Shown here: positions 1 to 5,352 of the stretch, piece by piece
Layout: every line of letters starts with the position of its first letter
Position numbering within the stretch: the first letter of the stretch is position 1
Virus record (IMG/VR): IMGVR_UViG_3300023192_000822
Span: 1-6,015 of that record
Length of the DNA: 6,015 nucleotides
Reading direction: 5' to 3' (one strand)
Translations under genes and position numbers: made by a program
Notes under the pieces: model-generated
Databases searched by the model: none
What the model saw: only the letters and a program-made list of their open reading frames with translations
Told to the model about the DNA's origin: nothing

Positions 1-555
1 AGAGTTCCCAAATATACTAGGAGCATTCTGCATCAGGTATGCTTTCTGGTCAATGATTTCACGTAGATATGTTAGGTTACCTGGACTTGGGAAAGGGTCA
101 TGAAGTAAAGAACATCCACAAACCCATACAGGATCAGTTACTTGTAGGTCTTTTATTTCTTCCCTAGGAATAATACTAGCTACATTCCTCATAGGTCTAG
201 TATTATTTAATTGTACCGCAGCTATATCATGATGCTTATCATAAGCAATAATTTGTGCGGTAGTGGAGTTAGCTGATACTACTTTGCTTCTATCGTAATC
301 AAAGACTTCAATACGAACTTCTTCTAGTACATCAGTCTTTACATCTTTCTTAAGAATGTTGTCCCATTGTTCAGATACTTTAATAGCCCCATCAATGACA
401 TGTTGACAGGTAAGTGCAATATTAATAAAGCTTCCTGCTTTATCCGGGTCTTCTTTACTATATACTAATACACCGCTTCCACCAGCTTGTCCAGCCAAAA
501 CTTTAGTTACCGGATACAAAACCTTTTCATGAATTTCTACTTGTGATAAACTCAT
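1..555 (-). CDS. Trypsin-like (S1/HtrA-type) serine protease, 3' end runs off the window
   Basis: Hand translation from ATG 555 (not in ORF track): MSLSQVEIHEKVLYPVTKVLAGQAGGSGVLVY...IALTCQHVIDG...YDKHHDIAAVQLN...VWVCG...MQNAPSIFGNS. It has the GSG motif, His motif (LTCQHV), Asp motif (DIAAV) and Ser motif (GNS, cut at base 1). SD AGGAGG at 563-568. Open for 185 codons. Confidence 0.9.
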   Translation of the reverse strand, partial: MSLSQVEIHEKVLYPVTKVLAGQAGGSGVLVYSKEDPDKAGSFINIALTCQHVIDGAIKVSEQWDNILKKDVKTDVLEEVRIEVFDYDRSKVVSANSTTAQIIAYDKHHDIAAVQLNNTRPMRNVASIIPREEIKDLQVTDPVWVCGCSLLHDPFPSPGNLTYLREIIDQKAYLMQNAPSIFGNS

Positions 556-1259: not shown

Positions 1260-1487
1260 TTAATTCATATTAAAGCGTTGCACAACTACTTCATAAGGTA
1301 AAGTATTTACCACCGTGGGGCCGTGTTCCAATTCTAATTGTCTCCATACTAGCTGTAATAAAACCTGATTAAATATGGGGCCAATCTTTTCCGTCACTAT
1401 AGTATAGGCTTGCATAGGGTCATTAGGAAAAAATGGTCTAACGGCTTCTAATATATCTTTATATTTTTCTTCGTTATTATTAATCAT
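1260..1487 (-). CDS. Hypothetical protein, 75 aa
   Basis: ORF track. TAATG coupling with the upstream peptidase gene; ends immediately before the hairpin cluster. Confidence 0.7.
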   Translation of the reverse strand: MINNNEEKYKDILEAVRPFFPNDPMQAYTIVTEKIGPIFNQVLLQLVWRQLELEHGPTVVNTLPYEVVVQRFNMN

Positions 1488-1954
1488 TAAAGTATAATTA
1501 AACCATCCTTACAAGTATATAGACCTGTTCCTATTCTACTAGTCACAAACTTGTCTGATTGCGGTTCAAATAATTCTGCTGTGCCATCGGCAAAGATGAC
1601 ACAATTATAAGCGTGTCCACCCGAATAGTCAATGACCAAGCCCACATTGTTTAAGTGAAATTTCCTATCCATCCTAGCTTTAAAGCTAAAGGCAAAATTA
1701 TCACAGTCATACTTTTCTGCTACGTACTTCTTCTTATCCGTCCAATCCCAATTAATAATAGCTTCAAAATCTAATCTACCACATGCCCAATACTTAGAAT
1801 CTAAGTGTTTACGTTTCATTCCCGCATTAATTATTTGCTTAGTTATTAAAGCATTATAAATAGTATTAGCACTTAGTTCAGTATAACCTTCTGCTAAAAT
1901 AGGTGGGGTTAATTTATTGGACAACTCTATAAGTTTATTGGCTATGACTCCCAT
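1487..1954 (-). CDS. Papain/transglutaminase-like cysteine peptidase, MOA lectin C-terminal (Agglutinin_C)-like family
   Basis: Motifs YxxEKYDCDNFA (Cys), GHAYN (His) and FEPQ (Glu) match the Cys-His-Glu triad layout of the Marasmius oreades agglutinin C-terminal protease domain and its prokaryotic/phage homologs. Confidence 0.8.
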   Translation of the reverse strand: MGVIANKLIELSNKLTPPILAEGYTELSANTIYNALITKQIINAGMKRKHLDSKYWACGRLDFEAIINWDWTDKKKYVAEKYDCDNFAFSFKARMDRKFHLNNVGLVIDYSGGHAYNCVIFADGTAELFEPQSDKFVTSRIGTGLYTCKDGLIIL

Positions 1955-2929: not shown

Positions 2930-4429
2930 TTATAGATAGAACTCATTATCACGAAACCATTTGGAAAAAGATTTACGTATTGGAAAAGATACATCTATTT
3001 CCGTAGAGTACCAAGGATGCATATTTGTTTGAAGGTCTTTGTGTGCCTTAGCAGCTAACGAAGTATCGTAAGTAGGGGCATCAGCATCTAATTTCGTTCC
3101 CAGATGTGAGCCAGCTTCATTCACTACCCAAGGGGGTTTCATATGAATAGGGATACCGAAATCATCTGTCTCAGTTTCTATGACAGGGGTATACCTCATG
3201 GCTTCCTGTGGCTGTTCCGAAGGAAATCCATACTCCCGTAGTAATTGGTGATGTTCTGCTTGCCTTCCCCCAGTATTTAATAGGGTAGCAAAGGTAGCAG
3301 CCATATCTTTTGACGATGAAGGTTTACCTTGTTTCTCTACCCATGACAAGAAAGACCCAGTAAAATCAATTGACCCATCTGCTTTTTCCATTAACATAGT
3401 AAATTCCCTTCCTTCATCAATAGTTGGAGATTCATCCAGTGGCGCAAAAACTTTACAGTACATGTGGTCTTCAATCATGCCTTCAATTATATCACAGGTT
3501 TGTTCCTGCTTATTAAAGAACTTACAGGTACCACACATAATACCATTTTGCATTTCCACATCAGTAGCATTTCGATAGCCTGCGTCTGGCTGAGTAATTT
3601 TACCTTCTTCTTTCTGAAGAAAGCAACTACCATTACATTCCTGTTTCTCCATCAGACAGCTACCATCAATACAAGTAGACACAGCATCATGAGCTTTCAA
3701 TATATCAAAGACAGCACTTTGATTTACACCCTTTTCACAAACTGTAACTTCTGCAAGTTCCATTTCATCTACTTGCATATAGGGTTGTAAACCTTTCTGC
3801 ATATTTTGAGTTTTGGTTGCGCTTCCCGCAATAGAATAACTCTTTAGCTTACCCTCATTAACTTGATCCATAACCCGCTGTGCAATTTTTGTATCGTCCC
3901 TCAATTCCGTAATGAAGAAAAGTCCATTCTCACCTACACCAGATTTAAAAATCTGCCCACCTTTAGAAATATAGGCGGGTAATGCCCAACCAACTTGAAC
4001 ATCAGAGTGTAGTACCATTGTATTTCTAGTACGAAAATTCCCCATATACTTCTTGAAAGCTTTTTCTAGGGCTTGTGTAGTAATTAAATGGCCCTCTCTA
4101 TCAATTAATTCTACAGATGCGGGGCCACCTAAGATCATAGGCTCTCCCTCACTAAGTTTAGAGACAGCTTTAGAATAAGTTAGGTCATCTGGATACGCCC
4201 TAGCTAGAGTTATAGTTTCTGCCTTAGATGCTATTCCCGCTTTAAGCAAACGTTTATATTCATCAAGGGCATCAGAAATATCTTCTAAAGAAACCTTACC
4301 ACCATCTTGCTTTTCAATGGGCAGTATGGTAGCATCAATACCAACTGTTTGATACATCTCATTATTAGCAGCCCAGTTAGAGGGACTTGGAATATTTCCT
4401 ACTACAGTTTTAATAGCAGAGATTGTCAT
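2930..4429 (-). CDS. Multidomain HK97/XkdF-type prohead (capsid maturation) serine protease fused to Cys repeats, a HiPIP-like domain and an unknown C-terminal domain
   Basis: aa ~98-246: GGPASVELIDREGHLIT, MVLH141SDVQVG, GKLKSYS199IAG, ELAE227VTVCEKGVNQSAVFDILK are typical prohead protease motifs. aa 277-328: C299-x2-C302-x9-C312-x12-C325. Confidence 0.85.
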   Translation of the reverse strand: MTISAIKTVVGNIPSPSNWAANNEMYQTVGIDATILPIEKQDGGKVSLEDISDALDEYKRLLKAGIASKAETITLARAYPDDLTYSKAVSKLSEGEPMILGGPASVELIDREGHLITTQALEKAFKKYMGNFRTRNTMVLHSDVQVGWALPAYISKGGQIFKSGVGENGLFFITELRDDTKIAQRVMDQVNEGKLKSYSIAGSATKTQNMQKGLQPYMQVDEMELAEVTVCEKGVNQSAVFDILKAHDAVSTCIDGSCLMEKQECNGSCFLQKEEGKITQPDAGYRNATDVEMQNGIMCGTCKFFNKQEQTCDIIEGMIEDHMYCKVFAPLDESPTIDEGREFTMLMEKADGSIDFTGSFLSWVEKQGKPSSSKDMAATFATLLNTGGRQAEHHQLLREYGFPSEQPQEAMRYTPVIETETDDFGIPIHMKPPWVVNEAGSHLGTKLDADAPTYDTSLAAKAHKDLQTNMHPWYSTEIDVSFPIRKSFSKWFRDNEFYL

Positions 4430-5352
4430 TAACTATGGACTCCCCAGATGACCCCGCTAACCGTAGGAGTTCCAGACGCAGATACTACTGAGACATTATC
4501 CCTAAAGTCTACGGGGAAATTAGATTCATATGTTGCTCCCGCTAATACAGGTATTCCCGTACTAGAAGACGCAATTACATCAAAAGCTACATACACAATT
4601 TCAGCACTGGTACCTGATTCATTCTTAATCTGTATGCCACGAATAACCGACATGGCAGGACGCTTTCTAGAAGTAGAAGCATTGGCAGTTCCTGACCATT
4701 CGTAATTCAAGCCAGACGCTCCATCAACATAAGTAGACACAGCATTAGTATCTTCCCGTACTTCAAACATAATCTTATCAGTATACCAGTCAATGTTATG
4801 GTTAGCAGCACTAACAACATAAACTCTATACGCTGCTGCTGCGGTACTCCCTACTACTGAATAAGAAGCCGTAATACGTGCAAAGCTAGTAGTTAAGTTA
4901 GTATCGGCAGAGGTAGCCAATTCAGTTCCCGAAGCATCAGTAATCTGTATCTTAACACTTCCTGACGCAGAGGCTCCCCGAACTTCACATTGAGCCGTTA
5001 TGTGTTGAGGATTTACTGTAAAACCAATATTAGGAGACACCCAATAAAAACCCTCACCAGCAGCCGAATTCCCTGGATTGGTGAGGAGGGACGCTGTACC
5101 AACAGACTGTTGGGCAGTACTTCTAGATATAGCTGACCCAGTAGCCGTAAACATTGTAATATCAGCAGCCTCTATTCTAGGGTTCGTAACCCAGTTAACT
5201 GCAATCTCACCCCTATCAATTGCTAATAGGTTTGCCGCTGTCGTAGAGGTTGCCGTTCTAAAGGGGGAATATTTTGTGTACGGATGAACGGATTGACGAG
5301 TAGATGAATCTACTTCCCAGCCCCGTGCATCATTATGTCGTTCATTAGCCAT
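4429..5352 (-). CDS. Virion structural/decoration protein with a carbohydrate-binding-like (CBM4/9-type) beta-sandwich
   Basis: Ala/Ser/Thr/Val-rich. NWVTNPRIE...YVDG...WSGTANASTS resembles the CBM-like modules of phage tail/structural proteins. Lies downstream of the capsid gene; SD AGGAG. Confidence 0.65.
   Translation of the reverse strand: MANERHNDARGWEVDSSTRQSVHPYTKYSPFRTATSTTAANLLAIDRGEIAVNWVTNPRIEAADITMFTATGSAISRSTAQQSVGTASLLTNPGNSAAGEGFYWVSPNIGFTVNPQHITAQCEVRGASASGSVKIQITDASGTELATSADTNLTTSFARITASYSVVGSTAAAAYRVYVVSAANHNIDWYTDKIMFEVREDTNAVSTYVDGASGLNYEWSGTANASTSRKRPAMSVIRGIQIKNESGTSAEIVYVAFDVIASSSTGIPVLAGATYESNFPVDFRDNVSVVSASGTPTVSGVIWGVHS

What the first reader, a model, noticed from the sequence alone, without database searches (positions are those of the whole stretch)
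2930..4429. Protease may be a self-cleaving polyprotein: recurring hydrophobic-x-K|[AQSE] motifs at domain borders
Seen: IEK40|Q, ILK245|A (exact end of the protease domain), MEK262|Q, LQK273|E (just before the HiPIP-like domain), MEK349|A (after it), VEK366|Q and IRK486|S. Known: some phage prohead proteases cleave after Lys (HK97 gp4 cleaves the capsid protein at a Lys-Ser bond). Inference: autoprocessing releases separate metal-binding and C-terminal modules inside the head. Caveat: LEK123|A lies inside the protease domain.
Basis: inference. Interest (0 to 1): 0.6.

Follow-up and report, generated by a model that had tools for sequence, protein, structure and literature searches.

The report
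Lysine-cutting capsid protease with self-cleavage sites
The gene encodes a capsid-maturation protease of an uncultured marine virus. The recurring "hydrophobic-x-Lys" motif is a statistically real, lysine-specific signature shared with the virus's scaffold protein, so it most likely marks where the protease cuts itself and its substrates. No cleavage has been shown directly.

Summary
[ILMV]-x-K-[AQSE] occurs 10 times against 2.1 expected (0 of 5000 shuffles).

The signal is specific:
- In 104 homologues, the variable region after the protease domain carries 5.1 sites per sequence against 1.0 expected. The reversed motif (x0.96) and Arg, Glu, Asp or Gln at P1 (all below 1) are not enriched.
- Among 117 ORFs from the window and four related contigs, the nine most enriched are the five proteases and four scaffold-like proteins.
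- All nine invariant Lys of that scaffold-like protein have I/L/M/V/F at P3.
- The capsid protein has one conserved site, at K29.
- Controls behave as expected. HK97's delta domain has 5 sites, including the known K103|S104 boundary. T4's scaffold is enriched for its known L/I-x-E motif, not for phi-x-K.

K40 and K245 flank the catalytic core and are invariant. K245 aligns with a Lys in HK97 gp4 and in HVTV-1 gp119. K262 and K273 are not conserved. K366 and K486 sit in a repeated helix.

Verdict: a Lys-specific S78 prohead protease that very probably autoprocesses. Release and retention of the HiPIP-like and C-terminal modules inside the head is plausible but untested.

The parts
2930..4429 (-). 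Whole gene: 499-aa prohead (capsid maturation) serine protease precursor, family S78, with a ~250-aa modular C-terminal extension
   Evidence: ORF list and translation. Pfam PF04586 scores 25 bits against a cut-off of 21, and PHROG 'head maturation protease' gives E=2.9e-15. 643 homologues were found.
4310..4429 (-). Putative N-terminal propeptide, residues 1-40, ending in the invariant site I-E-K40|Q (K40 codon 4310-4312)
   Evidence: [LI]-[ED]-K is present in 119/119 aligned homologues, and the full motif in 104/104 homologues below 70% identity. AF2 pLDDT is below 50 for residues 1-32.
3695..4309 (-). Catalytic core, residues 41-245 (predicted 22.5 kDa). H141 (4007-4009) and S199 (3833-3835) are the predicted catalytic pair. 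Internal motif copies lie at K63, K123, K156, K162 and K212.
   Evidence: H141 and S199 are invariant in A1. hhalign places them opposite HK97 gp4 H65 and S114. Foldseek top hit is T4 gp21 5jbl (prob 0.96), followed by KSHV protease.
3692..3703 (-). Site I-L-K245|A at the exact end of the protease domain (K245 codon 3695-3697): the best candidate for a 'release' cleavage
   Evidence: K is present in 121/121 sequences, P3 is I/L/V in 121/121 and P1' is A/G/S in 121/121. It aligns with HK97 gp4 A-M-K159|S and HVTV-1 gp119 V-S-K339|A. It lies in an AF2 stretch with pLDDT about 28.
3599..3694 (-). Linker 1, residues 246-277: Cys cluster C253/C258/C265/C269 and the lineage-specific sites MEK262|Q (3644-3646) and LQK273|E (3611-3613)
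   Evidence: pLDDT is 28-52. In distant homologues K262 is K in 31% and K273 in 0%. C253 and C258 are nearly invariant.
3434..3598 (-). HiPIP-like four-Cys module, residues 278-332 (C299, C302, C312, C325)
   Evidence: The A1 profile hits the HiPIP PioC 6xyv at E=0.0048 and 3h31 at E=0.094. Foldseek finds 1isu, 3h31 and 6xyv with TMt 0.5-0.7 and prob ~0.95. Pfam HIPIP matches 6/50 homologues. Some homologues lack the module.
3332..3385 (-). Sites MEK349|A (3383-3385) and VEK366|Q (3332-3334), bracketing a small conserved element with helix 356-366 (S-F-x-x-W-phi-x-K)
   Evidence: In distant homologues K349 is K in 53% and K366 in 73%. Helix. The repeated element is seen.
3095..3274 (-). Conserved C-terminal module, residues ~386-445. 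It has no family match and is free of motif sites.
   Evidence: Many invariant columns between R389 and G440. No Pfam or PHROG hit. 0 sites per 100 aa. Low AF2 confidence.
2933..2983 (-). C-terminal helix 483-494 with site IRK486|S (2972-2974): second copy of the K-[SA]-F-x-x-W element, and a candidate capsid-binding tail with a 'maturation' cleavage
   Evidence: K486 is K in 78% of distant homologues. Helix. Compared with the P0057/P0066 tails.

Best explanation
The gene encodes the capsid-maturation protease of a magrovirus-like marine archaeal tailed virus. It belongs to family S78 (HK97 gp4 type) and has a His141/Ser199 active site. Its substrate motif is a hydrophobic residue at P3 and Lys at P1, usually followed by Ser, Ala, Gln, Glu or Gly. 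After co-assembly into the procapsid, I infer that the enzyme does four things. (1) It cuts the separate helical scaffold-like protein at about 9-12 such sites. (2) It removes about 29 N-terminal residues of the capsid protein. (3) It cuts itself at the two invariant sites flanking its catalytic core, K40 and K245. (4) It cuts itself again at several less conserved sites in the linkers of its modular C-terminal extension. This would separate a ~22.5-kDa protease core, an ~8.7-kDa HiPIP-like four-Cys module and a ~13-kDa conserved C-terminal module, and clip the C-terminal helix. Shown here: the family assignment, the domain layout, and the enrichment, specificity and conservation of the motif. 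Inferred: that the motif is cleaved, that this enzyme does the cutting, and what happens to the fragments.
For: Family and active site. Motif enrichment in the window protein: 10 vs 2.1 expected, 0/5000 shuffles. Specificity: forward phi-x-K-small has z=11-12 in four proteases and four scaffolds. The reversed motif and all other tested P1 residues stay well below this, at |z| of 4.2 or less and mostly under 3. In the variable mid-region of 104 homologues the motif is enriched x4.9, against x0.96 for the reverse, x0.16 for Arg and x0.84 for Glu. A de novo profile around Lys gives I/L/M/F/V at P3 and S/A/Q/E at P1' in both the protease and the scaffold, and no such pattern around Glu. Of 117 ORFs, the top nine by enrichment are exactly the five proteases and four scaffold-like proteins; the next-best p is 0.014. 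Seven scaffolds have 9-12 sites vs 1.9-2.8 expected, and the capsid protein has Y-[LIM]-[MQ]-K29|[QG] in 8/8. All nine invariant scaffold Lys have phi at P3 in 63/63 contexts, against a phi frequency of 0.21. The scaffold-like protein is predicted as long helices with acidic disordered linkers. Inserts absent from the window protein are also enriched: 45 sites vs 12.2 expected. Positive control: the HK97 delta domain has 5 sites including F-N-K103|S104, vs 1.47 expected, p=0.007, and the 103-residue domain boundary is stated in PMC10275583. Method control: T4 gp22 has L/I-x-E 16 times vs 5.8 and gp21 7 times vs 2.6, with phi-x-K not enriched; the T4 specificity is taken from PMC9026906. K40 and K245 are invariant. 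K245 aligns with Lys in HK97 gp4 and HVTV-1 gp119. Sites concentrate in low-confidence linkers and avoid the HiPIP-like and C-terminal modules.
Against: There is no direct evidence of cleavage; everything rests on sequence statistics. The homologues are related by descent, so pooled z-scores overstate independence. Six motif copies lie inside the folded catalytic core (K63, K123, K156, K162, K212) or the HiPIP-like module (K307), where cleavage is unlikely unless the enzyme destroys itself late; in the conserved core, the control motifs are also 2.2-2.6 times over expectation. K262 and K273 are not conserved. K366 and K486 belong to a repeated helix that could be conserved for binding. The 29 N-terminal residues of the capsid protein are very conserved, which is unusual for a discarded peptide. 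The identity of the scaffold is inferred from position, composition and predicted helices only, with no family hit.
Confidence: 0.65

Rival explanations
1. The phi-x-K sites are real cleavage sites, but another enzyme cuts them: for example the Trypsin_2-like serine peptidase encoded a few genes downstream (window 1-555, minus strand), or a host protease. In that case the S78 protease is a substrate rather than a self-processor.
For: A trypsin-fold peptidase gene sits in the same gene block. It is conserved next to the protease in L001, L002, L004 and L010. Trypsin-fold enzymes often cut after Lys (general knowledge).
Against: No homologue lies within the fetched flanks of L005-L009, yet their proteases (shown for L005 and L006) and scaffold-like proteins (L005-L009) are equally enriched. 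The residue six positions before the G-N-S-G-G serine is Pro, not the Asp of trypsin (read from the sequence). HK97 shows that an S78 protease cuts after Lys in the same context. Arg at P1 is depleted, which is unlike trypsin.
Confidence: 0.1
2. The motif is not cleaved. It reflects a structural or binding requirement of helical assembly proteins, for example Lys contacts with the capsid interior, the scaffold or DNA. The repeated K-[SA]-F-x-x-W-phi-x-K helix is one example.
For: Several copies lie in predicted helices (K123, K366 and K486; most scaffold sites). K366 and K486 belong to a repeated element. Copies also occur inside the folded core.
Against: The reversed motif and Glu, Asp, Arg or Gln at P1 are not enriched in the same helices. 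T4's equally helical, charged scaffold shows no phi-x-K excess. The strongest enrichment is in low-confidence linkers. The motif coincides with the known HK97 cleavage site.
Confidence: 0.15
3. The pattern is a post hoc coincidence of a loosely defined motif in a Lys-, Glu- and Ala-rich protein.
For: The motif was defined after looking at the sequence.
Against: 0/5000 shuffles reach the observed count. The motif replicates in a non-homologous protein, the scaffold. It replicates in inserts absent from the window protein. It ranks top among 117 ORFs.
Confidence: 0.03

Closest known systems
HK97 gp4 protease and gp5 delta domain (Peptidase S78)
   Same: Same Pfam family. The catalytic His and Ser align. 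Maturation cleavage follows Lys in a hydrophobic-x-K|S context (F-N-K103|S104), and several further copies lie in the degraded delta domain. A Lys sits at the aligned end of the protease domain (A-M-K159|S against I-L-K245|A).
   Different: HK97 gp4 is 225 aa with only a short C-terminal tail and no inserted modules. Its scaffold is fused to the capsid protein. Here the scaffold-like protein is separate, and the protease carries an N-terminal 40-aa segment and a 250-aa modular extension with a HiPIP-like domain. Identity is low (hhalign E=7e-4).
T4 gp21, phiKZ gp175 and SPN3US gp245 prohead proteases
   Same: The recognition motif is short (a defined P3 and a charged P1). The scaffold is cut into many pieces and the capsid protein is trimmed at its N-terminus. 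The protease itself undergoes C-terminal, and possibly N-terminal, autoprocessing at its own motif (PMC9026906; PMC5694885). The fold is similar. The same shuffle statistic recovers the T4 motif in gp22 and gp21.
   Different: P1 is Glu in those phages and Lys here. They belong to a different peptidase family, have no large modular C-terminal extension, and infect bacteria.
Herpesvirus assemblin precursor (UL26-type, release and maturation sites)
   Same: Works alike: a protease domain of the same fold (KSHV and EBV protease hits) is followed by a linker and a C-terminal region whose tail binds the capsid. It self-cleaves at the end of the protease domain and near the C-terminus (established knowledge). 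K245 and K486 occupy analogous positions.
   Different: Herpes sites are Ala|Ser. There is no detectable sequence homology. The C-terminal part there is the scaffold itself, whereas here a separate scaffold-like gene exists. This is an analogy, not membership.
HVTV-1 gp119 head maturation protease (haloarchaeal tailed virus)
   Same: Nearest cultured relative: 30% identity over residues 98-263. It has Lys at the aligned domain end (V-S-K339|A) and a long acidic C-terminal extension. The capsid proteins are also each other's nearest cultured relatives.
   Different: It is 637 aa, with no HiPIP-like module. Its extension is an extremely acidic scaffold-like tract, and the capsid gene follows directly. 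In the window's lineage the protease lies four genes downstream of the capsid gene.

Membership tests
Peptidase S78 (HK97-type prohead serine protease) | Sequence match to the family profile above the curated threshold | tested here: met
   PF04586 scores 25.0 bits against a cut-off of 21 for P0001. All 50 aligned homologues match. PHROG head maturation protease gives E=2.9e-15.
Peptidase S78 (HK97-type prohead serine protease) | Conserved catalytic His and Ser at the positions of HK97 gp4 H65 and S114 | tested here: met
   H141 and S199 are invariant in 50 sequences and align with HK97 H65 and S114 (HK97 numbering counted from the sequence).
Peptidase S78 (HK97-type prohead serine protease) | Assemblin / T4 gp21-like fold | tested here: met
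   The best Foldseek hit is T4 gp21 5jbl (prob 0.96, E=7e-3, TMt 0.45), followed by KSHV and EBV proteases. The scores are modest because the model has several domains.
Peptidase S78 (HK97-type prohead serine protease) | Located in the head-morphogenesis gene block | tested here: met
   Related contigs share the order portal ... scaffold-like - SU10_MCP capsid protein - 2 small ORFs - ~310 aa - protease. The window itself holds only the ~310-aa gene and the protease.
Peptidase S78 (HK97-type prohead serine protease) | Proteolytic activity on head proteins, with cleavage after Lys | not testable with these tools
   Only motif statistics are available.
Self-processing prohead protease precursors (T4 gp21, phiKZ gp175, herpes UL26, P2 gpO type) | The enzyme's own recognition motif flanks its catalytic domain | tested here: met
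   The full motif at K40 and K245 is present in 104/104 distant homologues. Both sites lie at borders of the confident fold.
Self-processing prohead protease precursors (T4 gp21, phiKZ gp175, herpes UL26, P2 gpO type) | The same motif occurs in the scaffold and capsid substrates | tested here: met
   Scaffold-like proteins carry 9-12 sites vs ~2.4 expected. Capsid K29 is conserved in 8/8.
Self-processing prohead protease precursors (T4 gp21, phiKZ gp175, herpes UL26, P2 gpO type) | Demonstrated active-site-dependent autocleavage | not testable with these tools
   Needs expression of wild type against S199A.
HiPIP (PF01355) for residues ~278-332 | Four-Cys pattern C-x2-C-x(n)-C-x(n)-C in a HiPIP-like fold | tested here: met
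   C299, C302, C312 and C325 (numbering). The PDB profile match to PioC aligns the Cys residues. Foldseek finds HiPIP structures with TMt 0.5-0.7.
HiPIP (PF01355) for residues ~278-332 | Family profile match above threshold for this protein | tested here: inconclusive
   P0001 itself has no Pfam HIPIP hit even at E<=1. 6/50 homologues hit, best E=8.1e-6.
HiPIP (PF01355) for residues ~278-332 | Binds a [4Fe-4S] cluster | not testable with these tools
   Needs purified protein and spectroscopy.

The most novel reading that the evidence does not exclude
The protease acts as a delivery vehicle. It is a capsid-targeted polyprotein that carries exchangeable cargo modules into the procapsid of abundant marine archaeal viruses: a HiPIP-like iron-sulfur domain in this lineage, other inserts of 100-400 aa in relatives, and none in some. 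Lys-specific autoprocessing at linker sites then sets the modules free as folded proteins. These stay in the virion and enter the host with the DNA, in the manner of T4 internal proteins. That would make a redox or Fe-S protein a packaged virion component.
Probability: 0.15. Interest if true: 0.8.

Novelty: new variant of a known kind. Interest (0 to 1): 0.55.

Why it matters
Prohead proteases of uncultured marine archaeal viruses (magrovirus-like; among the most abundant ocean viruses according to PMC5434244) have only been annotated by homology. A predicted cleavage code (phi-x-K) gives a testable processing map for the protease, scaffold and capsid protein without a cultured host. It extends the HK97 Lys-specific rule to a distant archaeal-virus lineage. 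It also parallels the Glu-specific L/I-x-E rule of T4-like phages, suggesting a common P3/P1 recognition mode across the assemblin fold. The invariant sites on both sides of the catalytic core bear on an open question stated for T4 gp21: what autocleavage of prohead proteases is for (PMC9026906). If the HiPIP-like module is released intact, this would be a new kind of capsid cargo. One practical note: trypsin also cuts after Lys, so standard proteomics would hide these sites.

Tried and rejected
- A near-identity DNA search against 50,697 phage records found nothing, and no whole genome is held for the window.
- Literature: no paper combined prohead protease, cleavage site, scaffolding and lysine. 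The HK97 protease-domain paper PMC3709472 is not held. A HiPIP plus bacteriophage search gave only unrelated papers. The magrovirus papers mention the protease only as a marker gene.
- Pfam and PHROG scans found nothing credible for the N-terminal 95 aa, the C-terminal 155 aa, the scaffold-like protein or the 307-aa neighbour.
- Amphipathic-helix bias was considered and rejected on the reverse-motif and other-P1 controls and the T4 scaffold control.
- A T4-like reading (cleavage after the Glu that precedes Lys in I-E-K, M-E-K) was considered. phi-x-E is not enriched in scaffolds (z=-3.1) or in the mid-region (x0.84), so it was dropped.
- The downstream trypsin-like peptidase as the responsible enzyme was kept only as a low-probability rival.
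- Enrichment inside the conserved catalytic core is not informative, because any motif present there is inherited by all homologues; control motifs are also 2.2-2.6 times over expectation.
- Whole-model Foldseek E-values are all above 0.001; only the ranks and probabilities were used.
- Complex prediction, the reads tools and the large representative-protein search were not run. No binding claim is made, and homologues were plentiful.
Full report
**What is there.** The finding's coordinates hold one ORF on the minus strand (window 2930-4429, 499 aa).
- It is a prohead (capsid maturation) serine protease of family S78. Pfam PF04586 scores 25 bits against a cut-off of 21 over residues 167-242. 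PF14550 matches weakly over 96-207. PHROG 'head maturation protease' gives E=2.9e-15.
- H141 and S199 are invariant in a 50-sequence alignment. In a profile alignment they lie opposite HK97 gp4 H65 and S114.
- An AF2 model built on that alignment has a confident core at about 40-232. Confidence is low at 1-32, 234-275 and 333-343. A confident island at 278-332 is followed by a weakly predicted C-terminal third.
- Foldseek ranks T4 gp21 first (prob 0.96), then herpesvirus proteases. For the island it finds HiPIP structures with TMt 0.5-0.7.
- The alignment profile also hits the HiPIP PioC at E=0.0048. Pfam HIPIP matches 6 of 50 homologues, but not the window protein itself.

**Where it comes from.** No close DNA match exists among cultured phages, and no genome is held for the window.
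- The word search found 643 homologues of 422-850 aa, almost all from marine metagenomes.
- The only cultured relatives of the protease are haloarchaeal tailed viruses (HVTV-1 group, about 30% identity). The same group, plus a Methanofastidiosa virus, is nearest for the capsid protein of a 91%-identical contig.
- This is the pattern that defined magroviruses (PMC5434244). I therefore take the window to be from a magrovirus-like virus of marine archaea; this is an inference.
- Related contigs share the order portal ... ~280-aa acidic protein - SU10_MCP capsid protein - two small ORFs - ~310 aa - protease.

**Checking the observation.**
- [ILMV]xK[AQSE] occurs 10 times against 2.14 expected, and [ILMV]EK[AQ] 5 times against 0.08. 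None of 5000 shuffles reaches either count.
- The placement claims hold. K245 lies three residues after the Pfam domain end, inside the least confident stretch of the model. K262 and K273 are in the same linker. K349 follows the second low-confidence stretch.

**Is it more than a helix or composition effect?** Several independent controls say yes.
- Direction and residue: in four proteases and four scaffold-like proteins, forward phi-x-K-small has z=11-12. The reversed motif has z=1.2-1.6. Arg, Glu, Asp, Gln, Asn, Ser, Thr, Ala and Gly at P1 stay at |z| of 4.2 or less, mostly under 3.
- Region: in the variable region between the protease domain and the conserved C-terminal module of 104 homologues, there are 5.06 sites per sequence against 1.02 expected (x4.9). 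The reverse motif is x0.96, Arg x0.16, Glu x0.84, Asp x0.45 and Gln x0.38.
- De novo profile: around every Lys, I/L/M/F/V are enriched at P3 and S/A/Q/E at P1', in both protein families. Nothing comparable appears around Glu.
- Proteome rank: of 117 ORFs of at least 80 aa in the window and four related loci, the nine most enriched are the five proteases and the four scaffold-like proteins. The tenth has p=0.014.
- Scaffold detail: seven scaffold-like proteins (50-58% identical) carry 9-12 sites against 1.9-2.8 expected. All nine invariant Lys have I/L/M/V/F at P3 in all seven sequences, against a background frequency of 0.21.
- Scaffold structure: the protein has no family hit. It is predicted as long helices (2-72, 105-120, 170-211) joined by acidic disordered linkers, with small C-terminal helices. 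Calling it the scaffold is therefore an inference from position and shape.
- Non-homologous inserts: inserts found only in longer homologues are also enriched, with 45 sites against 12.2 expected.
- Capsid protein: its body is not enriched, but it has Y-[LIM]-[MQ]-K29|[QG] in 8 of 8 sequences.

**Controls with known systems.**
- HK97 gene 5 encodes a 103-residue scaffolding domain that is removed (PMC10275583). Its sequence reads F-N-K103|S104 at that boundary.
- The delta domain holds five matches to the window-derived motif against 1.47 expected (p=0.007). The mature part holds 2 against 0.97.
- T4's protease is known to cut after L/I-x-E and to fragment the scaffold gp22 (PMC9026906). The same shuffle test gives L/I-x-E 16 against 5.8 in gp22 and 7 against 2.6 in gp21. 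phi-x-K is not enriched there (4 against 3.3).
- So the statistic recovers real cleavage codes, and a charged helical scaffold does not produce a phi-x-K excess by itself.

**Site by site** (homologues below 70% identity).
- K40 and K245 carry the full motif in 104/104.
- K245 aligns with A-M-K159|S of HK97 gp4 and V-S-K339|A of HVTV-1 gp119.
- K349 is Lys in 53%, K366 in 73% and K486 in 78% of these homologues.
- K262 is Lys in only 31% and K273 in 0%.
- K366 and K486 each end or begin a helix (356-366 and 483-494). These helices carry a repeated element, K-[SA]-F-x-x-W-phi-x-K. They may be capsid-binding helices as well as, or instead of, cleavage sites.
- Copies inside the folded core (K63, K123, K156, K162, K212) are conserved, but control motifs are also over-represented there. 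They say little.
- Site density per 100 aa is 4.8 in linker 1, 0.8 in the HiPIP-like module, 2.9 in linker 2 plus inserts, 0 in the conserved C-terminal module and 1.7 in the tail. This fits cutting between modules rather than through them.

**Architecture.**
- Some homologues lack the HiPIP-like module. Others add 100-400 aa between it and the C-terminal module. The middle of the protein is therefore an exchangeable cassette flanked by sites.
All are acidic or neutral.

**Best explanation (confidence 0.65).** This is an S78 prohead protease with phi-x-K specificity.
- It degrades the scaffold-like protein and trims the capsid protein.
- It processes itself at K40 and K245, and at further linker sites.
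- The family, layout and statistics are shown. Cleavage, the responsible enzyme and the fate of the fragments are inferred.

**Rivals.**
- Another protease, such as the downstream trypsin-like gene, does the cutting (0.10). That gene is absent from the fetched flanks of five of the nine related loci (L005-L009), yet their proteases (shown for L005 and L006) and scaffold-like proteins (L005-L009) are equally enriched.
- The motif is a structural or binding feature that is not cleaved (0.15).
- The pattern is chance (0.03).

**Comparison with what is known.**
- It works like HK97 gp4/gp5: same family, same P1 Lys.
- It works like T4 gp21, phiKZ gp175 and SPN3US gp245: a short motif, many scaffold cuts, and C-terminal autoprocessing.
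- It works like the herpesvirus assemblin precursor, with release and maturation sites at the positions analogous to K245 and K486 (established knowledge).
- It differs in three ways: an invariant N-terminal site, a long modular extension, and a HiPIP-like module inside a capsid protease. I found no report of such a module.
- I rate it a new variant of a known kind.

The idea that the metal-binding and C-terminal modules are released and stay inside the head is compatible with the site distribution but untested. Clearance of the acidic fragments is equally possible.

**Limits.**
- All evidence is computational.
- The homologues are not independent.
- The scaffold and capsid proteins come from related contigs, not from the 6-kb window.
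- HK97 and T4 residue numbers were counted from the sequences fetched.

Noticed in passing
window 3434-3598 (-), residues ~278-332 of the protease: A HiPIP-like four-Cys module (C299, C302, C312, C325) sits inside a capsid protease. The profile hits PioC at E=0.0048, Foldseek matches HiPIPs, and Pfam HIPIP matches 6/50 homologues. Some homologues lack the module, so it is an accessory cassette.
   Followed up: partly
window 3623-3673 (-), residues 253-269: A second Cys cluster (C253, C258, C265, C269) lies in the low-confidence linker. C253 and C258 are nearly invariant across the family. It may be a small metal or disulfide knot, and it overlaps the K262 site.
   Followed up: no
window 3095-3274 (-), residues ~386-445: A strongly conserved C-terminal module with many invariant columns (R389, H393, G401, P403, E405, R412, P415, V416, N437, G440). 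It has no Pfam or PHROG match and low AF2 confidence. It may fold only on binding a partner.
   Followed up: partly
window 1-555 (-): The N-terminal 185 aa of a Trypsin_2-like serine peptidase (Pfam E=1.5e-5), 274 aa in full in L001:14129-14953. It makes a second protease gene in the same block. It is present next to the S78 protease in only 4 of the 9 related loci fetched.
   Followed up: partly
window 1487-1954 (-): A 155-aa protein matching PF18022 (ricin-type lectin C-terminal domain, E=2e-8). It is conserved in L001 and L002.
   Followed up: no
window 4429-5352 (-): A 307-aa, Lys-poor protein whose stop overlaps the protease start. It lies directly upstream of the protease in every related locus that reaches that far (264 aa in L010). 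It has no family match, apart from a faint CBM_4_9 hit in L005, and no phi-x-K sites.
   Followed up: partly
L008:6798-9131: In the contig of homologue P0073, Rieske, glyoxalase and FeS_assembly_P genes lie 1-3 kb downstream of the HiPIP-bearing protease. This may be an iron-sulfur theme in this virus lineage.
   Followed up: no
L007:9587-12578 (-): An inverted second copy of the block 107 aa - 85 aa - 314 aa - protease (a 474-aa variant) faces the first copy on one contig. It is either an assembly fold-back of two strain variants or a real inverted duplication.
   Followed up: no
L001:7236-8576 and its equivalents in L004-L010: The protease lies four genes downstream of the capsid gene, not between portal and scaffold as in most tailed phages. 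The 29 N-terminal residues of the capsid protein before the candidate K29 site are almost invariant.
   Followed up: partly
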